Assembly: GCF_001194135.2 (NCBI RefSeq)
Contig: NC_068988.1
Location: forward strand, 87,972,836-88,022,633
From: Octopus bimaculoides
Lineage: Eukaryota
DNA: 49,798 bases
Reading direction: 5' to 3'
Part shown: one piece after another, positions 3,501 to 42,272 of the stretch
How positions within the stretch are numbered: position 1 is the first letter of the stretch
Layout: each line of letters starts with the position of its first letter
Notes under the pieces: model-generated
The model's database searches: none
What the model was told of the DNA's origin: nothing
What the model saw: the letters and a program-made list of their open reading frames with translations, nothing else
Made by a program: the position numbers and the translations under genes

Positions 3501-4248
3501 ACCAGTGCCGTGGAGACAATCGACGTCATCGCATCCACAATATCTCGATTAGCAAGGGATGACATACAGGGATATAAATACATCGTAGGGTACCAAAATG
3601 TCTTGTCTTCTAACCTAGAACCTGCCAAAGTTCAATGTACAACAGTTAGACGCCACGTTTCTTGCGATAATGAAACGCAGATGATTATAAAAAAATGTGT
3701 AATTATCGGGGACAGAATGTAAAAGAAACGAAACGAGACTAAAGATAAATTAAATACTAGGAAATCCTCACTTAAAAGGATCTCATCCCACAAAGGACAC
3801 TGAATATGAACTGAACATCATGGCCGCCAGCACTAGCGAAGAAAATTTGGTGTAGTAGCTGCATGATGGTAAGGAGAACAAGAAGAGTAGAATAATATTT
3901 ACTGATTGAGGATGAGAATGGTGTTAGAGAAGATTATATTGAGTATAAACGTGATAGTCTACGGATAAAAATGAATAAAAATCATACCCTTGTTGGAGCA
4001 CGTGAGCTACTTCTCACTGAATGCAGGAGACTTCACGGATCACTCCAACGTAAAGATGCTCTGGACTCCACTATATTTTCTTCCTTACCCTAGTGTATTA
4101 CGTACTTAAATGCACATCACTGTATGTTTTGTAACGCCTCCTTGTATGGTATGTTTTAGTATTATATGTATGGATTTTTGTGACTAATTAAAAATAACGA
4201 CAACAACAGCAACAAAATAAAAATAATAAAACTCCTTTCTACTATAGG

Positions 4249-5277
4249 CATCTTTTTTCTCTGTCTGTCTTATCTTCAACATCCCTTTGAAATTGTCCAT
4301 GCATTCTTTTCTTTATCCACCTATTTTTAGTTTCATGCATTCTCAAGTGCTTGTACAGTGTTTTATCTTCGCAATCTTCCATCTATACAAACCTGGCCTT
4401 CTTACTTCCAATAACAGTGGTTCTGTGGCATTTTTTACATACCATGCTATGTTGCTTTCTGCTGTTCTAATGCTGTGTTCGCATCCAATCAGTCCTCTTC
4501 CCCCTCTTCTTCTTGATACATACAGTCTGTCTGTGTCACTTTTTGGGTGGAGTATCCCATATCTAGTCAGCAACTTCCTTGTCTTTCTGTCTAAGCTATT
4601 TAGTTCGTCTACTGCCCATGCGATCACCCCTGCTCCATATCTAAGGAGTGAAACCACCCAGGTGTTGATCGATCGCTTCAATCTTATTTAGTCCGTTTAA
4701 TTTCGACTTCAGGATCAGTCTCAGACTGCGCAAGTACTCCACTTTAAATTTTTCTGTCATTTCTTTCTCCATCAATTTATCCATTTCCAATATCTTCAAG
4801 TACTTATAGCCTGTCTCTTCTATCTGCTCCATAAACGTCCCCGACGGTATCACTAGCCTGTCCATACATTTGATTTTGCTTCTCTTCAAGACTAACACAC
4901 CACACTTTTTCAGTTTGAATTCCATTCTGATATCAGCACTGACAGTATACACCATATCAACGAAGGAACTGACTTGGGCTTCATCTTTACCATAAAGTTT
5001 GAGGTCATCCATGATTAACAAATAGTTGACTTTTTGTTGGCGGCTTTTGAATACGTACCCAGCCTTTGCTTTCCACAGAATCAGTGTTAGTGGTATCATG
5101 CACAGTACAAAGATCAGTGGGGACAGGTAGTCCCCTTGGAAGATGCCTCTCCTGATTTCTATTGTCCCTAAACTTCTTCCATATGTTGTCAGTCCGTCCT
5201 CCACTTCACCATACTTTTTCCAAGCAATCGCTCAACATTCGATGCAATACCAAATAGGTTCATAACATTCGATGCAA
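4249..5277 (-). mobile_element. R4/Dong-like non-LTR retrotransposon, RT-thumb fragment (frameshifted, truncated at both ends)
   Basis: Across several frames: LFGIASNVERLLGKSMVKWRT...IEIRRGIFQGDYLSPLIFVLCMIPL...NYLLIMDDLKLYGK...GYKYL...INTWVVSLLRYGAG...LHPKSDTDRLYVSRRRGGRGL...KRMHGQFQRD. These RT and thumb motifs are typical of the R4/Dong clade. The 5' flank on the sense strand is an (AAT)n array (5278-5357). Confidence 0.9.

Positions 5278-5357
<80 letters not shown>
5278..5357. repeat. (ATT)n microsatellite
   Basis: Direct reading; runs into an N gap. Confidence 0.95.
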
Positions 5358-7360: not shown

Positions 7361-7660
7361 TTTTATTTCATCGCCTGCGACTGTTGGGCAACTGATCGGT
7401 ACGTCCTCAGATCGTATGTTCTTGGCTTTCGTATGGTTGATCTAGAGGCCGACCGCCGAACCAAATTCCTCCAGCATGGTCTGCAGCTGATCAATGCTCT
7501 CTACTATCGGCACTATATCATTAGCGAATCTTAGATGTGTGAGCAGCTCTGGGTTTATCATTATGCTTCCGTTCCAGTTCATGTCTCGCATGACCATCTC
7601 GAGACATGCCGTGAAAAAGTTAGGAATGTTGATGTCTCCTTGCTTGACACTGTTCTCCAT
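7361..7660 (-). mobile_element. RTE-clade LINE, inverted RT segment
   Basis: Minus strand reads SVKQGDINIPNFFTACLEMVMRDMNWNGSIMINPELLTHLRFANDIV...QLQTMLEEF...VGL*INHTKAK...RSEDVPISCPTVAGDEIK. This matches the RT core (GV.QGD, HLRFADD). Confidence 0.85.
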
Positions 7661-7920
7661 CGAAGAATACTATCACGCAAGCTGCGATGGCCGGTCATCT
7701 CGCAAGGATTCACAGACAATCGGTGGACCCGTGCAACTGTCAAGTGGTACCCGCACGAACGGACGAGACCACTCGGAAGACCTCCAATCAGGTGGGAAGC
7801 TGATTTAAAAAAGATGTTTGGAACAACGTGGTGGAGAATGGAGAAAATGCTGTGGCCAGCGGAGCCAACTCGACATCACACAGCTTATCGGTTCCAGGTG
7901 ATCCAGGTGATCCAGGTGAT
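7659..7920 (+). mobile_element. RTE-clade LINE, ORF C-terminus and 3' tail
   Basis: RKLRW...FTDNRWTRATVKWYPHERTRPLGRPPIRWEADL is the RTE C-terminal signature. It ends in a short tandem tail (TCCAGGTGA)x3 at 7893-7919. Confidence 0.85.
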
Positions 7921-7949
7921 AATTTGATTTCTGTATTTATTCAGTAGGT

Positions 7950-18660: not shown

Positions 18661-19423
18661 AATACATATATGCATATATACAAAAGTACGTACATAAATA
18701 TAGCTATATAATATGTGTATGTGTATATGTCGGTGTGTGTGTGTTTATGCTTTTGTATGTGTATGCGTGTATGCGCGTGCACACACATGTATACTCGCAT
18801 AAAGATATCCATCTATGATGCATACACAATTACATACATATTACAAATACTCTAAGCACAACACACGCATGCATTCACGCACACACACACATCTATCCAT
18901 GTATACAAATGACAGAAATATGTCTATAGAAATGGGCAGAAAATTGTAACAACCAGCTTTATATCGGGTCCAATTTTTGAATTCGTTAACATTGATTTGT
19001 TCGTGTATTGAATTCCTTCAAAGATTCTAGCTCTCCTGCAACCTCTTATCTGTTCTAAATGGCAAATACTCTGATTATCTTGTCATGTGAGATTGTGTAT
19101 GGCAGATTGTTGATACGTATGGTTGCATATGGTTGAATGTAGTAGTGTGTATAATAGTGTATGCATGTTTGTGTGTGTGTGTGTGTGTGTTTTATATGAC
19201 TATGCATTTTTGCGCACACGTCTGTGAGCGTGTACGTGTATGTGCATGTGTGCGCGCGCGCGTATGTGCGAGAGAGTGAGAAGGAGAGAAAGATAAAGAG
19301 AGGGAGAGAGAGAGAGAGAGAGCCAATTGTATGCATAGGTATGAAGCTGCAGATGTATGTATAAGGGGTTGCATACAGATACATACATAAATATATATAC
19401 ATGTATGCATACATACATACATA

Positions 19424-19892
19424 GCCGCTTATAATAAAAAGTAGTACAGATGGAATGTTCCAGTGAAGACCTTAATAAAATATAAGAACAATAGACCCGA
19501 TATAATGATTTGGGATTGAGAAGAGAAACTGTGCACAGTTGTGGAAATTAGCTGCCCAGCGGATGCTGACGTAAAGCTGAAGAACAGTGAAAAAAAGAAC
19601 ACCTATGCTGAACTATTAACAAATCCGAAATTACACTATCCAGATTACAAGTTCAGGTTTATACATGTAATTATTGGGGCTCTGAGATATGAAGCACACT
19701 GCCTAAATACAAATCTTGAGAAATTAGGCTTCTGAAAATCAGAAAGGAGAAAGCTATTTCGAAGACTACAGTTCCAACCCATCACTGGGACGGTAAAAAT
19801 CTGTAAAACTTTCCAGAAGTTTATCATTTAAATATATATGAGCATGTCTAGATATGCAGCTATATGTATGAGAATACATAGATAAAGCAAAA
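19424..19892 (+). mobile_element. R4-like RLE non-LTR retrotransposon (TACA-associated family), 5'-truncated copy 1
   Basis: WNVPVKTLIKYKNNRPDIMIWD*EEKLCTVVEISCPADADVKLK...YPDYKFRFIHVIIGAL...LEKLGF*...GTVKICKTFQKFII* is a PD..E-type restriction-like endonuclease C-terminus, with the stop at 19829-19831. Both flanks are CATA/TACA repeats. Confidence 0.85.
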
Positions 19893-19934
19893 CATACAAA
19901 TCTGCACATATACATACATGTATACAAACAAAAT

Positions 19935-20173
19935 TACCCTGTTGTTGATGTTGAAATTCCAATGAAGGAGGTGGACTGTAGGTTAGGAACCGGTTCTTTC
20001 TCTATTGGAAAGAAATCTTGAAATAAAACAGAACAATGATATGCATATATACATGCATACAAACCTACGTACATGCAAACTTTCAGCTTCGTACCTATTA
20101 TTATTGGAGCAACAAAATACATACAAACCCGCCGTGTACGCAGACAACTCCCAAATTAAAAAGAGAAAGAGGA
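19935..20173 (+). mobile_element. Two short remnants of the TACA-associated family (3' UTR-like 19935-20040; FSFVPIIIGA plus 3' end 20082-20173)
   Basis: gttaggaaccggttctttctctattggaaagaaat resembles the copy-2 UTR gttggaaaccgactccctccttaggggaagattt. 20082-20123 reads FSFVPIIIGATKYI and the piece ends aattaaaaagagaaagagga|catacat, like copy 2 (aattaaaaaatagaaggga|cataca). Confidence 0.55.
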
Positions 20174-20290
20174 CATACATACATGCATACATAATACTTA
20201 AATATATACATATATATCCATACATGCATAGATACTTGCATACATACATACATACCTACATACATACATACATTCATGGATACATGCATC

Positions 20291-20332
<42 letters not shown>

Positions 20333-20390
20333 CATACATACATACATATATACATACATGCAGACAGACATACATACATACAAACAGACA

Positions 20391-21528
20391 GACAGACTCT
20401 ACCTAAGAAGAAATGAAGGTGGTAGAGTCCTGAGATCAGTGCAGACAGCCTTCGAATGCCGTATGGTATCACTCAGGCAGCACCTGCTAAACAACAGCAG
20501 CAAAAATAGATATATTAATACAATGCTGAAAAGTGAAGTGAGCAACATTGTACGAGTTGGCAGTAAACTCCTCAAGAATCACTCTCTTCTTAATGATCTC
20601 ATACACAGCTCCAAAACAGCTGGGCATACAAAAAAAAAAAAAAGATCATGCATGGGTATGTTGCCCGGAAGTTTCAAGAAGACAGTAGAACTGACACGAA
20701 GCGCAGACTCTCTTAGACACAAGACCGCAACATCACATCACACTTTGAAGGCTATGCGTTTGTAATCCATGAACAGGAGATTACATGGTGAACAAGAGAG
20801 ACAGTGACGCTCTTGTAATCCCAAGGTGCAACCGCATGTGTAGGCTATGTCAAGTTTCTGTGGAAGGCATCACGCATGCGATTAGCAGCTGTCCCAAAAT
20901 GTCGTCACGGTACTACCTCCCTATGCGGCACGATGTTGCTAAAACAATTTACAATGGCATCCGCAAAAATGACTGTCCTGAAATAAACTTAGAAAATCCC
21001 TCTGTTATGGAATACATACATAAACACGAACCCAAGGAATACTGGTGGAATATTCCCATCAAAACTTCTCTCAAATGTAAACATAACAGGCCGGATATTG
21101 TCGTTTGGGACAGAGTGCAGATATATGTATCGTCATAGAGGTTAGCTGCCCTGCAGATATAAACATCTCTTTGAAAATCAAAGAAAAAGAGGATAGCTTT
21201 GGACAACTGCTTCGAATCCTCCAGCTTCTATATACCCAGACCATAAATTCTTATTCATACCAATAATAATTGGATCGCTAGGTTTTGTTAGTAAATACTT
21301 AATGGGAAAGCTGAATAAACTAGGATTTTCAGAAAGAGAAATCGACCGGCTGATTCGTACATAACAAGTCCAATCTGTGAGTGGAAGGGTAAAAATGTGC
21401 AAGACTTTTCTCAAGTTCCAAATGTGAATTTGTCTGTGTTTACATCCCAAAGATGGAACCTTATATCTTTGTTGGAAACCGACTCCCTCCTTAGGGGAAG
21501 ATTTATAATAATTAAAAAATAGAAGGGA
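20391..21528 (+). mobile_element. R4-like RLE non-LTR retrotransposon (TACA-associated family), longest copy: thumb, CCHC knuckle, endonuclease and 3' UTR
   Basis: DRLYLRRNEGGR (thumb); ITSHFEGYAFVIHEQEI; CRLCQVSVEGITHAISSC (CCHC); YLPMRHD; WWNIPIKTSLKCKHNRPDIVVWD...ICIVIEVSCPADINI...IPIIIGSLG...CKTFLKFQM* (stop 21425-21427). Several frameshifts. TACA repeats on both sides. Confidence 0.92.
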
Positions 21529-21643
21529 CATACACATATACATACATACATACTTACATACAAACATATATACATACATACATACATACATACATACACA
21601 CATACATACATATATATACATACTTACATACATACATATACAC

Positions 21644-22047
21644 TTAGGACGGATATTGTTTTGGGGACAGACAAGAAAAATCATGCACATCAGCTATCCT
21701 GCTGAAGTGAATATTGCTTCGAAAATCAAAGAGAAAGAGGATTACCACAGGCAAATGCTTCAAAACCTCCATTTTCCATATCCAGATTATAAATTCACAT
21801 TTATACCAATAATAATAGGAGCTTTTAGTTTTGCAAATAAATGCCAAATTGGTAATCAGTATAAGCTGATTTAACTCACACGTTGCAAATACAATCTATA
21901 AGCAGAACAGTAAAAATATGCAAGACTTTTCTCAAGTTTAAAATGTGAAATTGGTTTTACCTACATTTTATCGATGGAGCATTGTAGATTTGTTAGAATC
22001 CAGCTCCATTTTTTACAGATAGATTACAAACTAAAGATAGAAGAGAA
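21644..22047 (+). mobile_element. R4-like RLE non-LTR retrotransposon (TACA-associated family), 5'-truncated copy 3
   Basis: Begins at the RPDI-equivalent (ggacggatattgttttggggacaga) and reads ISYPAEVNIASKIKEKED...YPDYKFTFIPIIIGA. Shares ...caagactttt ctcaagtt.aaatgtga with copy 2. Ends gatagaagagaa|cacacataca. Confidence 0.85.
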
Positions 22048-22104
22048 CACACATACATATATACACGCATATAAATATACAGATATATAAAATATATGTA
22101 TGTA

Positions 22105-29279: not shown

Positions 29280-29494
29280 ATCTTTTCGAGCTCTTCGTCA
29301 TACACTTGTATGGTGATATCTATAATCTTGATTTTCTTCATCAGTTCGTCAACCACAGCAATGTCTGGTCTCCGAGCATTAATCGATGAATCACACTGGA
29401 TTGTAAAATCCCACAAGAGCTTATACTCATTTTACTCGGTGACACCCTCTGGTTTATACTTGTACCCTTTCAATGTCCTTTCAAAACCGTACTT
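29280..29494 (-). mobile_element. R4/Dong-like element, endonuclease N-terminal half
   Basis: KYGFERTLKGYKYKPEGVTE*NEYKLLWDFTIQCDSSINARRPDIAVVDELMKKIKIIDITI. Confidence 0.85.
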
Positions 29495-31490: not shown

Positions 31491-32309
31491 CACACAAACA
31501 CACACGCACACACACACATACACGCACACAGACGCACACACACGCACACACACATACTCAGAAAACACGAAACACAAAAAACAAATAGGTAATAAGAAAT
31601 AAATAGAAAAACAACAGGACTTGGACGTTAAAATAAGAAAAAGGAAAAAAAAAATGCAGAAAAGTTTTGTCTTTATCTTTCTCTCTTTCCCTGCTCTCCC
31701 TCTGTCTCTATATATCTCTCTTTCCTTGTTATCTTTCTCTCTCTCCCCTTCTCTCTCTATCTCTATGCTCTTTTTCAACAATGATGTACACATACATATA
31801 TGTTGATTTGTATATATATATATACATNNNNNNNNNNNNNNNNNNNNNNNNNNNNNNNNNNNNNNNNNNNNNNNNNNNNNNNNNNNNNNNNNNNNNNNNN
31901 NNNNNNNNNNNNNNNNNNNNNNNNNNNNNNNNNNNNNNNNNNNNNNNNNNNNNNNNNNNNNNNNNNNNNNNNNNNNNNNNNNNNNNNNNNNNNNNNNNNN
32001 NNNNNNNNNNNNNNNNNNNNNNNNNNNNNNNNNNNNNNNNNNNNNNNNNNNNNNNNNNNNNNNNNNNNNNNNNNNNNNNNNNNNNNNNNNNNNNNNNNNN
32101 NNNNNNNNNNNNNNNNNNNNNNNNNNNNNNNNNNNNNNNNNNNNNNNNNNNNNNNNNNNNNNNNNNNNNNNNNNNNNNNNNNNNNNNNNNNNNNNNNNNN
32201 NNNNNNNNNNNNNNNNNNNNNNNNNNNNNNNNNNNNNNNNNNNNNNNNNNNNNNNNNNNNNNNNNNNNNNNNNNNNNNNNNNNNNNNNNNNNNNNNNNNN
32301 NNNNNNNNA

Positions 32310-32935
32310 AAGATTTACAACCAAAAGCCCTACCATACATCTGCGCACACAACCCTCTTAACAATGAAACCTTCCACATCATCCTCCAAAACATTCCCCT
32401 ACTAAAAAGGGACCACACAATGAATTTTATTCTCCAAACCCACACCATCATAAAAAGCATGAGAGAACCCAAATCTAGGAAAAGTCCCCTAACACAAACC
32501 CGAATACGCACAACAACAACAACACTGAAGCCGTCAGTAAAAAAATGCGGAAGACCCAACTGTGGGATATGCGTCAATCTAATTGAGGGATCAGAGTTCT
32601 CTTTCAAACAGGGTCAACGTTTCACAGTGAAGAGCAACTTCACATATGCTTCAGAGAACCCGATATACGTATTAACCTGCTCTGGGTGTCGAAAGCAATA
32701 CTTAGGCCAAACAAAAACAGTCTACGTCAAAGGATGGCTCTGCACAGATCCCAGATCAAAATTCTGAAAAACAGAAAAATAGCATTCAGCAAGCACATCG
32801 ACATTTGCGCCAATAACAAACTACGAAGCTTCAGAATCTATCCCCTCTATCCATTCAGGGACGATGCAACCTGTAGTTAGCATATTAGTAAAGAGTCATT
32901 CTTTATCACGAAATACCAACCCCTTTTGAATGCAT
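32310..32935 (+). mobile_element. Penelope-like element, linker and C-terminal GIY-YIG endonuclease (inactivated)
   Basis: LPYICAHNPLN...KCGRPNCGICVNL...NPIYVLTCSGCRKQYLGQT / KNSLRQRMALHRSQI...FSKHIDIC...FRIYPLY...KESFFITKYQPLLN. One frameshift near 32715 and a stop at 32878. The upstream part lies in an N gap. Confidence 0.88.
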
Positions 32936-36837: not shown

Positions 36838-37159
36838 AAAGGGTATAAAGACTCCGATCGGTCATAAATGACCATGGGATTTCACCTAGAAAGTTCCCCT
36901 CCAAAGTAAGATTGCTTACGGAAGACCAGTAGTCGTCGCCCATGCATACCAACCTCCGATGTTATCCAAGGGAAAGGCAAAGGCCAATACAGCTTGGCAC
37001 CAGTGACATCACAACTCATTTCTACAGCTGAGTGAACTGGAGCTACGTGAAATAGAGTGTCTTGCTCAAGAACACAACACACAGCCCGGTCCGGGAATGG
37101 AACTCGCAACCTCATGCTTATGAGCCCGACGCTCTAAGCACTGAGTCATGCGCCTTCAC
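36838..37159 (-). mobile_element. SINE type D (type-B-like head and centre, distinct 3' tail)
   Basis: Head gtgaaggcgcatgactcagtgcttag...gagttccattccc; centre gttcttgagcaagacactctatttcac; tail ...aactttctaggtgaaatcccatggtcatttatgaccga. The same tail occurs at 46085-46190 (+). Confidence 0.8.
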
Positions 37160-37174
37160 TGAGCAATGCGCCAG

Positions 37175-37435
37175 AGAAATTGTGTAAACTCATAAATTTT
37201 GCAATTCCCTCCCATAACGGAGCCGATACCAAAGAAATTGAAAAAATTGAGAAATTTTAGGACCTAGTCAGAGAAGTGAGGAGACTGAAGAAGACTAAGA
37301 CAACTATTATTCCAGAGGCAATTGGTGAAATTGGTACGATACCTAAAATACTGACTGAGAGATATTGGAATCGAGACTCGCATTGGCGATCTGCAGAAAA
37401 ATTCTAGGAAATGTTCACGAGATTTGAAGAAATTT
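37175..37435 (+). mobile_element. R4/Dong-like endonuclease C-terminal fragment
   Basis: EKLCKLINFAIPSHNGADTKEIEKIEKF*DLVREVRRLKKTKTTIIPEAIGEIGTIPK...DIGIETRIGDLQK. Confidence 0.85.
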
Positions 37436-37448
37436 TTTGTCACCAAAC

Positions 37449-37575
37449 GAAATTGTCATTTAAGCATTTACTAACACAGCCAAGTGCACCAATAATTATA
37501 AGTGTAACTGTGAATATTTAATGGGAAATTTGTAAATTTCAGAGCAATTATCCGTAAACATTCCTGCTTATTAAA
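37449..37575 (-). mobile_element. Locally duplicated fragment of the TACA-associated R4-like family
   Basis: About 115 bp nearly identical to 38098-38168 plus 39313-39357; minus strand reads ...LIIIGALG(C/Y)VSK.LNDN. Confidence 0.75.
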
Positions 37576-37589
37576 CTAGCACGTAATAA

Positions 37590-37933
37590 GTGAAGGTACG
37601 TGGCTTAGTGGTTAGGATATTCGGTTTACGGTTGTAAGGTCGTGAATTCAATTCCCGGCGACGCGTTGTGTCCTTGAGCGAGGTACTTTATTTCATGTTG
37701 CTCCAGTCCACTCAGCTAGCAAAAATGACTGGTACCTGTATTTCAAGGGGCCAGCCTTGTCACATTCTGTGTCACATTCTGTGTCACATTCTATGTCACA
37801 TTGAATTTTCCTGAGAACTAGGCCAAGGGTATACGTGTCTGTGGAATGCTCAGTTACTTGTACGTTAATTTCACGAGTTCCGTTGATCGGATCAACTGGA
37901 ACCCTCGTCGTCGTAACCTACGGAGTGCCAGTT
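37590..37933 (+). mobile_element. SINE type B, full-length
   Basis: A-box TGGCTTAGTGG (37601-37611), B-box-like GTGAATTCAATTCC (37642-37655), centre gttgtgtccttgagcgaggtactttatttca, an internal 12-bp unit expanded to ~4 copies (37759-37802), and 3' end gttccgttgatcggatcaactggaaccctcgtcgtcgtaacctacggagtgccag. Confidence 0.9.
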
Positions 37934-39145
37934 CCAGTAACTTTATAGTAATAATAAATTCCACCACTGTGGAACGGTGAAAGGTTATGCATTGTATTTT
38001 AGAAAAGTTTTGCATACTTCTACAGTTCCACTTGCAGATTATATTTGTAATGTGCATGTTAGCTGGTCACTTGCAAGGCCTGGAAACTAGCTTTACGAAA
38101 TTGTCATTTAAAAATTTACTAACATAGCCAAGTGCACCAATAATTATAAGTGTAAATGTGAATATTTACTCTTTACTCTCTTTACTCTTTTACTTGTTTC
38201 AGTCATTTGACTGTGGCCATGCTGGAGCACCGCCTTTTAGTCCAGCTAATCGACCCCAGGACTTATTCTTTGTAAGCCTAGTACTTATTCTATCGTTCTC
38301 TTTAGCCGGACCGCTAAGTTACGGGGGCGTAAACACACCAGCATCGGTTGTCAAGCAATGTTGGGGGGACAAACACAGACACACAAACACAGACACACAA
38401 ACATATACATACACAAACATATATATATATATATATATATATATANNNNNNNNNNNNNNNNNNNNNNNNNNNNNNNNNNNNNNNNNNNNNNNNNNNNNNN
38501 NNNNNNNNNNNNNNNNNNNNNNNNNNNNNNNNNNNNNNNNNNNNNNNNNNNNNNNNNNNNNNNNNNNNNNNNNNNNNNNNNNNNNNNNNNNNNNNNNNNN
38601 NNNNNNNNNNNNNNNNNNNNNNNNNNNNNNNNNNNNNNNNNNNNNNNNNNNNNNNNNNNNNNNNNNNNNNNNNNNNNNNNNNNNNNNNNNNNNNNNNNNN
38701 NNNNNNNNNNNNNNNNNNNNNNNNNNNNNNNNNNNNNNNNNNNNNNNNNNNNNNNNNNNNNNNNNNNNNNNNNNNNNNNNNNNNNNNNNNNNNNNNNNNN
38801 NNNNNNNNNNNNNNNNNNNNNNNNNNNNNNNNNNNNNNNNNNNNNNNNNNNNNNNNNNNNNNNNNNNNNNNNNNNNNNNNNNNNNNNNNNNNNNNNNNNN
38901 NNNNNNNNNNNNNNNNNNNNNNNNNNNNNNNNNNNNNNNNNNNNNNNNNNNNNNNNNNNNNNNNNNNNNNNNNNNNNNNNNNNNNNNNNNNNNNNNNNNN
39001 NNNNNNNNNNNNNNNNNNNNNNNNNNNNNNNNNNNNNNNNNNNNNNNNNNNNNNNNNNNNNNNNNNNNNNNNNNNNNNNNNNNNNNNNNNNNNNNNNNNN
39101 NNNNNNNNNNNNNNNNNNNNNNNNNNNNNNNNNNNNNNNNNNNNN

Positions 39146-39176
<31 letters not shown>

Positions 39177-39905
39177 CGACGGGCTTCTTTCAGTTTCCGT
39201 CTACCAAATCCACTCACAAGGCTTTGGTCGGCCCGAGGCTATAGTAGAAGACACCTGCCCAAAGTGCCACGCAGTGGGACTGAACCCAGAACCATGTGGT
39301 TGGTAAGCAAGCTAATGGAAAATTTGTAGATTTCAGAGTAATTATCCGTAAACATTCTCTTTCTCACCGATTCTAGAATTAATGGTCATATCTGCAGGGA
39401 AGTTGACCTCTATAACAATACATCATGTCTTCTTTACTTTTCTGTCTCGAACAATCATAGCTGATCTGATATATTTGCACTCAGTCGAAGTTTATATTAG
39501 ATCATCTACCAATATCCTTTGAGATGAAACGTAGTTTCATATCAGAATTATTCACTATGTAACCCAGGGCTGTGTTTCCTGAAAGTGACATTATATATTG
39601 TTTTAGCAACATCATCCTGTGGCATTAGAAGGTTAATGACATTTTTTAGGGCAGCTGCTGGTCACGTTTAATGACTTCCACAAATATGAATATAACAAAA
39701 TTTGACATTTTAAAACGCTTCTTGTGGGTGTAAACGTTTCAACGACCCTTTTATTAAATAGACATTTTGTTGCTATTCTTGAATTGTAAAAGTATAATCT
39801 TTAAAAGGCAACGTGATGCAATGGTCATAATTCCAAGACAAGCTACAGTTCCGGCTGATATTAGTTTCTTTCTCGAGTCTTCAGGTATTATAAGCAGCCT
39901 GTCTT
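37934..39905 (-). mobile_element. Old degraded copy of the TACA-associated R4-like family, split by a SINE C insertion (pieces 39313-39905 and 37934-38168)
   Basis: Minus strand: ITLPFKDYTFTIQE*Q; VTSSCPK; gatgttgctaaaacaatatataat (cf. ~20935); CIVIEVNFPADMTI...EKENVYG*LL*NLQIF | SINE | IFTFTLIIIGALGYVSKFLNDN...SGTVEVCKTFLKYNA*. Colinear with 20740-21427. Confidence 0.8.
38169..39312 (-). mobile_element. SINE type C with internal TA/CA microsatellite (internal part in an N gap)
   Basis: Minus strand: tRNA-like head with B-box GGTTCAGTCCC (A-box apparently lost by 5' truncation), gtcttctactatagcctcgggccgaccaaagcc..., internal (TA)n/(TG)n, 3' part ...ggtgctccagcatggccacagtcaaatgactgaaacaagt, and an (AAAGAGT)n-like tail. 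Confidence 0.88.
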
Positions 39906-41080: not shown

Positions 41081-41765
41081 TATGGTGTCAAGCAAGTTGA
41101 CATCCTCGACCCAGCTCTCTTTACCTTGTATTTTGTTGCTACTCTTCCCGAAGCTTTTGCTCTAGATTGCTCTTCTGAATATCTATGAGGTTCCAGTCTT
41201 TCGGTCTTCTCTCCAACTTGCGTCAATTTACTGCTAATTCCAAAGATTTTTACAGTCTCTTATTCGTGATTTCATTTATGCAGATGATTATGATTCAGTT
41301 GTTCATACAGTTGAAGAAATGCAAATTTACATAGATCATATTTCTGCACATTACAAGTCATTTAGACTCAGCTTGGCCTAGTCAAAACAGGAAACCCATA
41401 TGTGATATATGTATCTTAGTTGAAGGAACTGTACTGACAGTGTAAGACACGTTTGTTCACCTCGGCAACACACACATCTATTCTTGTTCCTTGGATGATG
41501 AAATATCTTTGAGGTTTCAGCGGGCAACTGATTATTTTAGGGTTTTTGAGTCATGTGTCTGGTTCGCACATGACATCACAAGGCGAACAAAAGTTTCTAT
41601 GTCCCGTGTGCATGGACTGACGTTGTTCTTTTAATTTGAGACGTGGACATTTTGCAGGCATCGTATAAGGGTCCTTCAACGCTTCTATTAGTGATGTCCG
41701 ACACACATTCTGAATGTTGGCTTATTCCCGCGGACTCCAGACACTGAATTCTTGAGGGGATCCGA
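41081..41765 (+). mobile_element. RTE-BovB-like LINE, degraded RT fragment
   Basis: GVKQVDILDPALFTLYF...NLRQFTANSK...IRDFIYADD..VVHTVEEMQ...TFVHLG...SLDDEISLR...ETWTFCRHRIRVLQRF...RTPDTEFL. Many frameshifts and stops. Confidence 0.8.
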
Positions 41766-42272
41766 ATAATCGAAACGTTGGTATGATCACTGGTACAGTA
41801 AATACATTTTGATTTATTGATTTAATGTGTACATAAGCAGAGAGATCTGCTACTCTACCGCAAAAAACCAGAACCTCCATCATTTATAAAAATATACATA
41901 TCCATTTTTTTCTTGTTTATTGTATATGGCTTTCAGTCATTCATAGCCCCAGCTAATTTATAATCGTTTTAGAGCACTCTCACAGAATAAATGCTGCGTT
42001 TAAACTAATTCAAAAATGAATTGTGCGTTCATGTGCGTCTTACCACACATAGTCATGTGCACACGTAGACACGCGTGCGCACACACTCTGAGACACACGC
42101 ACACGCACACACAGACCTACACACATATATCCAAACATACATAGTGTGAAAGCCGGAATCGGATAGAAATTTGGTGTATTTCTAATGGTGAACGCGAAGT
42201 TGTACAGAAACAACTGTAAAAAATATTAAAGTTGTGTTTAATATTTATTCTTCATTTTCTTCCTAATCTTAT

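What the first reader, a model, noticed from the sequence alone, without database searches (positions are those of the whole stretch)
19380..22080. Stack of five same-strand retrotransposon 3' ends in (TACA)n: candidate tetranucleotide-microsatellite-targeting RLE retrotransposon
Seen: within 2.7 kb, five remnants of one lineage (19424-19892, 19935-20040, 20082-20173, 20391-21528, 21644-22047) all lie on the plus strand, separated only by CATA/TACA repeats. Their 3' junctions share a register, a purine-rich end then CATACA-like sequence (aaagcaaaa|cataca; agagga|catacat; agaaggga|cataca; agaagagaa|cacacataca). Their 5' truncation points also abut TACA repeats. The copies are clearly diverged from each other, so they look like independent insertions over a long time rather than a tandem duplication. 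The longest has thumb, CCHC and PD..E endonuclease motifs. Established: R4-clade Dong elements use such an endonuclease to target (TAA)n. Inference: this lineage differs in sequence from the TAA-associated Dong pieces elsewhere in the window and has switched to (TACA)n. I know of no described R4-type family with that target. Caveat: TACA repeats are very common here, and the 3' repeat could be the element's own tail.
Basis: partly seen in the sequence, partly recalled or inferred. Interest (0 to 1): 0.75.

Follow-up and report, generated by a model that had tools for sequence, protein, structure and literature searches.

The report
Retrotransposon lineage that targets (ACAT)n microsatellites
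The region is a pile-up of dead copies of a jumping gene that inserts specifically, and always in the same direction, into ACAT/TACA simple repeats; intact relatives in other animals show the same habit, which makes this a sister lineage of the known TAA-targeting "Dong" elements with a different target.

Summary
The observation largely holds. Three of the five plus-strand remnants (19409/19424-19892, 20391-21528, 21644-22047) are clear C-terminal pieces of a retrotransposon with a restriction-like endonuclease (RLE). They share about 46% amino-acid and 67% nucleotide identity. One more (20082-20173) is moderately supported and one (19935-20040) only weakly. All end in a purine-rich tail followed by CATACA.

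Evidence from outside the window supports the interpretation. Intact or nearly intact relatives in an Argonauta hians assembly and in several metagenome or unnamed assemblies carry (CATA)n on the sense strand. The repeat lies directly upstream of full-length and 5'-truncated copies as well as downstream. In one copy it is 200 bp upstream but only 11 bp downstream. So the repeat is a target, not only a tail.

These elements form a well-supported clade (96% bootstrap). That clade is sister to a very large clade whose members are flanked by (TAA)n, the Dong type. A piece of the (TAA)n type also lies in this window, at 4240-5230(-).

Some sister families are flanked by (CTTA)n or followed by (AC)n. 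A 3'-UTR hairpin that keeps pairing through compensatory changes is conserved across families.

I found no report of this target for R4/Dong elements, but Repbase and Dfam could not be searched. Verdict: a new variant of a known kind.

The parts
19379..19423 (+). (ATAC)n tract upstream of copy A. It merges with the element's internal ATACATACATA, so the exact 5' junction is ambiguous.
   Evidence: TRF; sequence; alignment
19409..19892 (+). Copy A: a 5'-truncated remnant. It holds the RLE domain (RPD 19490-19516, E 19538-19570), IIGAL 19652-19690, the ORF end at 19822 and a short 3' UTR ending ...aaagcaaaa|cataca.
   Evidence: tblastn E 2.5e-36 and 1.3e-34 against L001; best blastx hits are all Group I; motif coordinates
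19893..19934 (+). Degenerate TACA-type spacer.
   Evidence: Sequence; perfect ACAT run 19910-19919
19935..20040 (+). B1: a putative 3'-UTR-only remnant, weakly supported.
   Evidence: Local alignment against shuffles: p 0.016 against the Argonauta 3' UTR and 0.038 against copy C; no coding match; not found by the hairpin model
20082..20173 (+). B2: an internally deleted remnant. It has the FSFVPIIIGA motif at 20082-20111 and a 3' terminus ...aaaaagagaaagagga|cataca.
   Evidence: tblastn motif match (E 8); 3' end similar to the Argonauta element, p 0.014
20174..20390 (+). Compound microsatellite (ACAT)n/(AT)n/(ACAG)n between B2 and C. This is residual target.
   Evidence: TRF 20173-20394, period 4, 55.8 copies
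20391..21528 (+). Copy C, the longest remnant: thumb-region motif to 3' end. It has CCHC 20839-20892, RPD 21085-21111, E 21129-21158, K 21174-21200, a stop after 21424 and 3' end ...tagaaggga|cataca. It is dead, with at least 3 frameshifts (one at the A-run 20631-20644) and 5 stops.
   Evidence: mean identity 40.5% to Group I, 28.6% to Group II, 23.1% to the TAA clade
21458..21484 (+). Decayed relic of the conserved 3'-UTR hairpin (CCUU-stem-UUGUU-stem-CGG), 44 nt before the 3' junction of copy C.
   Evidence: Best hit of covariance model R1 in the whole window, both strands, 12.2 bits, E 0.3; the model was built from 7 families
21529..21643 (+). (ACAT)n between C and E. This is residual target.
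   Evidence: TRF 21528-21638, 28 copies
21644..22047 (+). Copy E: a 5'-truncated remnant starting within the RPD motif. It has IPIIIG 21794-21832, the ORF end at 21945 and 3' end ...agaagagaa|cacacataca.
   Evidence: tblastn E 4.6e-19; blastn to copy C 67% over 429 nt, running up to the junction
22048..22081 (+). Degenerate ACAC/ATAC flank downstream of E, followed by (TATC)n and an assembly gap.
4240..5230 (-). Comparison piece: an RT fragment of the (TAA)n-type Dong lineage, with (TAA)n directly upstream (5277-5357, read on the minus strand).
   Evidence: blastx 56% to P0084 against about 35% to the TACA group; sequence; the P0084 and P0126 families end in (TAA)n
37329..39844 (-). Further decayed remnants of the same TACA-group lineage on the other strand. 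They are broken by SINE-like insertions and an assembly gap, so the junctions cannot be read.
   Evidence: tblastn; sequence

Best explanation
**What it is**
The region is one compound (ACAT)n microsatellite that was hit repeatedly, over a long time, by non-LTR retrotransposons of a lineage that uses this repeat as its target. The lineage inserts in one fixed orientation.

**The element**
- It is about 3.9-4.4 kb long and has a single ORF of about 1150 residues.
- The ORF encodes an N-terminal three-helix domain, a reverse transcriptase, a CCHC knuckle and a C-terminal restriction-like (PD-(D/E)xK) endonuclease.

**Likely mechanism (inferred by analogy with R2, not shown here)**
1. The protein binds the repeat.
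2. The endonuclease nicks the TGTA strand in phase (5'-TATG^TATG-3').
3. The freed 3'-OH primes reverse transcription at the last A of the element RNA. The RNA is probably held through a conserved 3'-UTR hairpin.
4. The cDNA is often incomplete, which gives 5'-truncated copies.
5. The upstream end is joined in the repeat, sometimes through microhomology. Examples are the internal ATACATACATA for copy A and ACAGAC for copy C.

**How the stack formed**
Each insertion leaves repeat on both sides. Later insertions land beside earlier ones in the same direction, which builds a head-to-tail stack. The copies in the window are old and dead.

**Relationship**
The lineage is a sister clade of the (TAA)n-specific Dong-type elements.
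For: **Shown in the window**
- Three same-strand remnants are related by protein.
- They share a 3' register, A|CATACA.
- Perfect ACAT runs cover only 1.2% of the window.

**Shown in relatives**
- (CATA)n lies on the sense strand on both sides of full-length L001, L006 and L017.
- It lies upstream of full-length L018 and L020.
- It lies on both sides of the 5'-truncated copies L002 and L016. In L016 it is 200 bp upstream and 11 nt downstream.
- It lies downstream of L015 and L019.
- The Argonauta hians copy L009 has (ACAT)15 upstream, about 815 nt before the ORF, and the end ...aagaga|cataca.
- Every one of these is in the same orientation relative to the repeat.
- At the 5' side the flank ends ...CATA| in most full-length copies.

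**Phylogeny (neighbour-joining, 200 bootstraps, 969 columns)**
- Group I 96%, Group II 96%, Groups I+II together 96%, (TAA)n clade 100%.
- Mean identity between the TACA group and the TAA clade is 30%.
- Copy C falls in Group I, closest to Argonauta.

**The (TAA)n clade**
Its members end ...gtaaaa|(TAA)n in five independent contigs.

**3'-UTR hairpin**
- All 6 base pairs show compensatory changes, and 100% of cells are paired against 21-43% in the slid controls.
- Its relic is the top hit of the model in the window, at the expected place in copy C.

**Protein features**
- Pfam gives RVT_1 plus a weak zf-RVT match. The best solved relatives are R2 proteins at E 1e-21.
- The N-terminal domain is homologous to that of the TAA clade (hhalign probability 96.8%).
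Against: - No genome-wide census of the source genome was possible.
- The external copies are few (about 12 loci). Several come from short-read metagenome contigs, where ends made of repeats may partly reflect where assembly broke.
- B1 and B2 are weakly supported.
- Copy A's 5' junction may be element sequence rather than target.
- Short 3' repeat stretches (L016, L019) would also fit a short encoded tail.
- The nick site, the role of the hairpin and the role of the N-terminal domain are inferred, not tested.
- In the Argonauta copy the upstream repeat lies 815 nt before the ORF, so it is not certain that it abuts the true 5' end.
Confidence: 0.85

Rival explanations
1. The TACA repeat is only the element's own 3' tail, as with the microsatellite tails of many LINEs. 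Insertion is not targeted, and the stack is a local accident.
For: Every copy is followed by the repeat. In L016 and L019 the downstream repeat is short (11-18 nt) and then unique DNA follows, as a short encoded tail would look.
Against: The same repeat, in the same orientation, lies directly upstream of full-length copies (L001, L006, L017, L018, L020) and of 5'-truncated copies (L002, L016) that have different truncation points. L016 has 200 bp upstream and 11 nt downstream. Upstream of L001's repeat there is no 3' UTR of another copy. A tail cannot explain the upstream flanks.
Confidence: 0.05
2. One insertion was copied locally by tandem or segmental duplication, and the copies then decayed.
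For: All copies lie in the same orientation, close together, separated by the same repeat.
Against: The copies have different 5' truncation points and lengths. Identity is only 46% at the amino-acid level and 67% at the nucleotide level. Copy A is closer to an intact protein from another source (P0001, 55%) than to copy C (46%). No duplicated non-element flank exists.
Confidence: 0.03
3. The association is passive. Either copies survive better in repeat-rich, gene-poor DNA, or the repeats grew out of element sequence (the internal ATACATACATA and the CATACA-like ends) after insertion.
For: The element's coding sequence contains an 11-nt ACAT stretch (21012-21022), and copy A starts there. The window is extremely rich in microsatellites of many kinds. 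Passive accumulation near CA repeats has been proposed for Waldo-A and Waldo-B in Drosophila (PMC3812793).
Against: Only one repeat type and one orientation is seen across unrelated hosts, although the window holds many other repeat types. Sister families have (CTTA)n on both sides (L004) or (TAA)n (L021-L026), so the repeat type follows the phylogeny, not the host. The junctions are in phase with the repeat unit.
Confidence: 0.07

Closest known systems
Dong (R4 clade; Bombyx mori, Anopheles, Biomphalaria and others), specific for (TAA)n
   Same: It has a single ORF with RT, a CCHC knuckle and a C-terminal restriction-like endonuclease, and no N-terminal zinc fingers. The N-terminal three-helix domain is homologous (hhalign 96.8%). 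It inserts into a microsatellite with repeat on both sides in a fixed orientation. The (TAA)n-flanked clade recovered here is the sister group.
   Different: The target is a tetranucleotide repeat, (ACAT)n, not (TAA)n. Identity to the (TAA)n clade is only about 30% over 969 columns (23% for the window copy). The 3' UTR motif differs. No reference Dong sequence was available for direct comparison.
R4 of nematodes (28S rDNA-specific)
   Same: It belongs to the same general architecture class, RLE LINEs of the R4/Dong group (PMC7998251, PMC3774820).
   Different: Its target is a unique rDNA site. It was not compared directly here.
Waldo (R1 clade; WaldoAg1/2, WaldoFs1), specific for (ACAY)n
   Same: It uses essentially the same microsatellite target (PMC3812793, citing Kojima and Fujiwara 2003).
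   Different: Waldo has an N-terminal AP-type endonuclease and belongs to another LINE group. The elements here have a C-terminal restriction-like endonuclease, and Pfam finds no AP-endonuclease domain. The shared target is convergent.
Togen ((TG)n-specific, near NeSL) and the microsatellite-specific HERO families of the leech
   Same: These are RLE LINEs that use microsatellites as targets (PMC4640811).
   Different: They have other targets and belong to other named clades. I could not test whether the present clade would be filed under HERO in Repbase.
R2 (28S rDNA-specific)
   Same: It is the best match among solved structures (E 1e-21, RT region). It shares the integration logic of target-primed reverse transcription with an RLE and a structured 3' UTR.
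   Different: R2 has N-terminal zinc fingers plus Myb and a single rDNA site. Here there are no zinc fingers, and the target is a simple repeat.

Membership tests
RLE-type non-LTR retrotransposons (R2/R4/NeSL/HERO/CRE group) | RT followed by a CCHC knuckle and a PD-(D/E)xK endonuclease at the C terminus, in a single ORF | tested here: met
   Copy C motifs are at 20839-21200. Relatives have intact ORFs of 1148-1174 aa. Pfam gives RVT_1 plus a weak zf-RVT match. The best PDB hits are R2 proteins.
R4/Dong clade | RT phylogeny groups the element with reference R4, Dong and Rex6, to the exclusion of HERO, NeSL and R2 | not testable with these tools
   No reference sequences could be fetched. Indirect evidence only: the clade is sister (88% bootstrap against non-RLE outgroups) to a clade whose members are flanked by (TAA)n. 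The outgroups used are not RLE elements. RepeatMasker-style annotation reports abundant Dong-R4 in octopus (PMC13282606), but I cannot link those families to this one.
R4/Dong clade | N-terminal SANT/Myb-like domain without zinc fingers (PMC7998251) | tested here: inconclusive
   AlphaFold2 gives three helices at pLDDT 77. The top Foldseek hit is a SANT domain, but at E 2.3 and TM 0.42-0.50. A profile search against PDB sequences finds nothing significant. The domain is homologous to the N terminus of the (TAA)n clade (hhalign 96.8%). No CCHH or CCHC motif is seen at the N terminus.
R4/Dong clade | HDV-like self-cleaving ribozyme at the 5' end (shown for Dong and R4, PMC3774820) | tested here: inconclusive
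   Rfam gives no hit at gathering score in 8 loci and no hit up to E 10 in the 5' UTRs of L001 and L006. Rfam models often miss LINE ribozymes. Small 5' hairpins were seen by eye only.
R4/Dong clade | Insertion into one repeated target sequence, in one orientation, with target on both sides | tested here: met
   (CATA)n lies on the sense strand on both sides in L001, L002, L006, L016 and L017, and on one side in L015, L018, L019 and L020. The window copies and Argonauta agree.
Dong in the strict sense | Target is (TAA)n | tested here: not met
   The copies at 19380-22080 and their Group I relatives are flanked by (ACAT)n. (TAA)n flanks are found only in the separate clade (L013/14, L021-26) and at the window piece 4240-5230(-).
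Waldo (R1 clade) | N-terminal AP-type endonuclease; R1-clade RT | tested here: not met
   Pfam finds no Exo_endo_phos domain, and the endonuclease is C-terminal and restriction-like.
R2 | Insertion at the 28S rDNA site; N-terminal zinc finger(s) | tested here: not met
   The flanks are microsatellites. The N terminus lacks zinc-finger motifs.
HERO | RT phylogeny groups the element with HERO reference elements | not testable with these tools
   No HERO reference sequence was at hand. Repbase Reports entries on microsatellite-specific HERO families (cited in PMC4640811) are not readable here.

The most novel reading that the evidence does not exclude
These elements may belong to a so far undescribed, widely distributed sister clade of Dong whose members have re-targeted among simple repeats. 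(ACAT)n is seen in both major groups. (CTTA)n on both sides is seen in one family (L004). (AC)n downstream is seen in another family, where only 3' flanks were recovered. A 3'-UTR hairpin that keeps pairing through compensatory changes would be the handle for reverse transcription in Group I. Such a natural series of closely related enzymes with different short-repeat targets would let one map how an R2-like machine reads its DNA target.
Probability: 0.5. Interest if true: 0.65.

Novelty: new variant of a known kind. Interest (0 to 1): 0.55.

Why it matters
- Site-specific RLE retrotransposons (R2 and its relatives) are the best model for target-primed reverse transcription. They are also being developed as tools for inserting genes.
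- How they change target is poorly understood.
- Here is a clade close to Dong that uses a tetranucleotide repeat instead of (TAA)n, with sister families on (CTTA)n and apparently (AC)n. All share one protein architecture and a homologous N-terminal domain.
- That gives a ready-made comparison set for finding the residues that read the target.
- It is also a second, independent origin of ACAY-repeat targeting, alongside Waldo.
- For genome annotation, it explains why ACAT microsatellites in this genome are interrupted by same-direction LINE fragments. Such stacks are expected products of targeting, not duplications.

Tried and rejected
No reads could be laid, so there was no census and no check for polymorphism or transcription.
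- The supplements of four papers hold no reference sequences or TE libraries.
- PMC4400214 is not held.

**Searches that gave nothing**
- Pfam on the window peptide alone found no family.
- Rfam found no ribozyme or other family in the 5' UTRs or in whole loci.
- Literature searches for an (ACAT)n-specific R4/Dong element found nothing. Repbase and Dfam are not searchable here, so this is weak evidence of novelty.

**Tests that stayed inconclusive**
- The fold search of the N-terminal domain was not significant.
- The hairpin model did not find copies A, B1, B2 or E, so it does not support B1.
- The pairwise UTR alignment does not tie copy A's UTR to the others.
- The outgroups in my tree turned out not to be RLE elements, so the tree cannot separate R4 from HERO or NeSL.

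**Technical and local dead ends**
- The first bootstrap script timed out. I rewrote it.
- The minus-strand remnants at 37.3-41.9 kb are too broken by SINE-like inserts and gaps to read their junctions.
- Other ACAT arrays in the window show no recognisable remnant next to them.

**Readings I considered and rejected**
- Tandem duplication: the truncation points differ and the divergence is deep.
- Pure 3' tail: the repeat also lies upstream of the copies.
Full report
**What the window is**

The window is a draft assembly with 21 assembly gaps and 36% G+C. It is extremely rich in microsatellites of many kinds. The closest named relative of the elements studied here comes from the cephalopod Argonauta hians.

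**Check of the observation**

I translated the five stated intervals and built a read-through peptide of the longest one, copy C (20391-21424). I searched it against the whole window with tblastn.
- Two other plus-strand pieces are clearly related. Copy A (19409/19418-19822) matches at E 2.5e-36 with 46% identity. Copy E (21653-21945) matches at E 4.6e-19 with 46% identity.
- At the DNA level, C and E are 67% identical over about 430 nt, and the alignment runs up to the 3' junction.
- Copy C carries these motifs:
  - thumb-region motif DRLYLRRNEGGR, 20391-20426
  - CCHC knuckle CRLCQVSVEGITHAISSC, 20839-20892
  - RHD, 20902-20946
  - RPD, 21085-21111
  - catalytic E, 21129-21158
  - K, 21174-21200
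  - C-terminal IPIIIG motif, 21248-21289
- Copy C is dead, with at least three frameshifts and five stops.
- B2 (20082-20173) has only FSFVPIIIGA plus a 3' terminus that resembles the Argonauta element's terminus (p about 0.014 against shuffles).
- B1 (19935-20040) has only weak UTR similarity (p 0.016-0.04).

So three remnants are firm, one is moderate and one is weak.

The 3' ends share the register 'purine-rich end, then CATACA'.

The 5' junctions abut TACA-type repeats, with one caveat. The element's own coding sequence contains ATACATACATA (21012-21022). It encodes a conserved EYIH motif, and copy A is truncated exactly there. Copy C starts within an ACAGAC microhomology to an (ACAG)3 run.

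Perfect ACAT 10-mers cover only 1.2% of the window on the plus strand. Sixteen of the 35 runs lie in this region.

**What it is: evidence from elsewhere**

A protein search found 45 unnamed relatives. I fetched the DNA around some of them, and the picture was consistent.
- L001 is a full-length, nearly intact element of about 3.95 kb with one frameshift. It has 234 bp of (ATAC)n directly upstream and (ACAT)n directly downstream.
- L002 is a 99%-identical copy on another contig. It is 5'-truncated and has the repeat on both sides.
- A scan of metagenome contigs gave two more full-length elements with intact ORFs. L006 (1161 aa) has (CATA)n at both ends. L004 (1148 aa) has (CTTA)n at both ends.
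- Further look-ups added these cases:

| Locus | Source or type | Repeat on the sense strand |
|---|---|---|
| L009 | Argonauta hians | (ACAT)15 upstream, about 815 nt before the ORF; end ...aaaaaagaga\|cataca |
| L015 | closest to the window copies | ...aatgaa\|catacata(caga)n |
| L016 | 5'-truncated | (CATA)50 upstream, only CATACATACAT downstream |
| L017 | full-length | repeat on both sides |
| L018 | full-length | repeat upstream |
| L020 | full-length | repeat upstream |
| L019 | second subgroup | (CATA)4.5 downstream |

In every case the repeat reads ACAT on the element's sense strand.
- In most full-length copies the upstream flank ends ...CATA|.
- In most copies the downstream flank starts |CATA.
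- So insertion is in phase with the repeat unit.
- The L016 case, and the upstream repeats in general, show that the repeat is a target and not just an encoded tail.

**Relationship to Dong**

A more distant relative, P0084 (30% identity), ends in (TAA)n. A search with it found a very large family: 1898 proteins at E <= 1e-20. One member, P0126, ends ...gtgaatttgtaaaa|(TAA)n in five independent contigs and has (TAA)n upstream in two of them.

I built a neighbour-joining tree on 969 columns with 200 bootstraps.
- Group I has 96% support. It contains the ACAT- and CTTA-flanked families, Argonauta and the window copies.
- Group II has 96% support. It contains one family with (CATA)n downstream and one with (AC)n downstream.
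- Groups I and II together have 96% support.
- The (TAA)n clade has 100% support.
- All of these together, against the outgroups, have 88% support.
- Mean identity between the ACAT group and the TAA clade is 30%. Identity to the outgroups is 20%.

Copy C averages 40.5% identity to Group I, 28.6% to Group II and 23.1% to the TAA clade.

The window also holds a piece of the TAA lineage at about 4240-5230(-). It is 56% identical to P0084 but about 35% to Group I, and (TAA)n lies directly upstream of it.

The caveat is that my outgroups are not RLE elements, and I could not obtain reference R4, Dong, Rex6, HERO or NeSL sequences. 'R4 clade' is therefore inferred only from the sister relation to (TAA)n-specific elements and from the shared architecture.

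**How it probably works**

*Shown here*
- The domain order is an N-terminal domain, RT, CCHC and RLE.
- The N-terminal 90 residues are predicted to form three helices at pLDDT 77. They are homologous to the N terminus of the TAA clade (hhalign 96.8%, E 2.6e-10).
- The top structural match is a SANT domain, but it is not significant. This fits the published SANT/Myb-like domain of R4/Dong (PMC7998251) without proving it.
- A 3'-UTR hairpin lies 40-48 nt before the 3' end in seven families: CCUU, a 6-bp stem, a loop xxGUx, the returning stem, then CGG. All six pairs show compensatory changes. Pairing is 100% against 21-43% when the partner columns are slid.
- A covariance model of the hairpin has its best hit in the whole window inside copy C's UTR, at the expected distance from the end. 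The hit is weak (E 0.3) and the stem has decayed. In L002 the model hits at E 2.5e-8.

*Inferred by analogy with R2*
1. The protein binds the repeat.
2. The endonuclease nicks the antisense strand at TATG^TATG.
3. The 3'-OH primes cDNA synthesis from the terminal A of the RNA, which is held through the hairpin.
4. 5' truncation and microhomology joining follow.

Repeated hits in one tract, always in one orientation, give the stack seen here.

An HDV-like 5' ribozyme is known for Dong and R4 (PMC3774820). Rfam did not detect one here, so this remains open.

**Comparison with what is known**
- ACAY repeats are a known target of Waldo, which is an AP-endonuclease element of the R1 clade (PMC3812793).
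- (TG)n is the target of Togen, and some HERO families are microsatellite-specific (PMC4640811).
- Dong-R4 LINEs are reported as abundant and recently active in octopus, with 5 families and 1129 near-full-length insertions. No target is mentioned (PMC13282606, PMC8967140).
- My searches found no paper describing an (ACAT)n-specific RLE element. Repbase and Dfam could not be consulted.

**Verdict**
- The finding is real.
- The lineage is best described as a Dong-like, RLE-type retrotransposon clade specific for (ACAT)n.
- Related families are flanked by (CTTA)n or followed by (AC)n.
- I rate it a new variant of a known kind, of moderate interest.
- The main open points are a genome-wide census, placement against reference clades, and biochemical proof of the cleavage site.

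Noticed in passing
window 4240-5357 (-): An RT fragment of the (TAA)n-type Dong lineage (56% identical to P0084) has (TAA)n directly upstream. Its 3' part is deleted at about 4240.
   Followed up: yes
window 37329-39844 and 41764-41850 (-): More decayed remnants of the ACAT-group lineage lie on the minus strand. They are interrupted by SINE-like sequences (for example around 37000-37200 and 39200-39320) and by an assembly gap. No junctions can be read.
   Followed up: partly
window 21012-21022: The element's own coding sequence holds ATACATACATA. It encodes the conserved EYIH motif and amounts to 2.75 units of the element's own target. It coincides with the truncation point of copy A and could act as a microhomology site or even as a self-target.
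   Followed up: partly
L004 1-102 and 4822-4871; L003 401-477: Group I families flanked by (CTTA)n instead of (ACAT)n. L004 has an intact 1148-aa ORF and a 3' UTR of about 1 kb.
   Followed up: partly
L010-L012 (3' ends near 3865): A Group II family, also present in Tara Oceans metagenome contigs, ends ...attattacg|(AC)n. This suggests a further target change. Only 3' flanks were seen.
   Followed up: partly
L001 7371-7397, L006 4411-4437, L009 8544-8570 and others: A conserved 3'-UTR hairpin (CCUU, 6-bp stem, xxGUx loop, stem, CGG) keeps pairing through compensatory changes in seven families. The (TAA)n clade has a different hairpin (TTCTTAT...ATAAGAA around a CCGG) before its 3' end.
   Followed up: yes
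window 32309-32767 (+): An ORF after an assembly gap contains ...IYVLTCSGCRKQYLGQT..., which looks like a GIY-YIG endonuclease motif of a Penelope-like element.
   Followed up: no
window 7535-7927 (+): A 130-aa ORF contains ...RPLGRPPIRWEADLKK..., which resembles the C-terminal end of another LINE family.
   Followed up: no
window 29348-29449 (-): A weak RLE-like match (…RRPDIAVVD…, tblastn E 0.65). It may be a fragment of a third RLE element.
   Followed up: no
L021 709-1068, L022 586-945: The (TAA)n-type P0126 family has about 1.5 kb between the upstream (TAA)n and the main ORF. That stretch includes a called 119-aa ORF, so a small upstream ORF is possible in this family.
   Followed up: no
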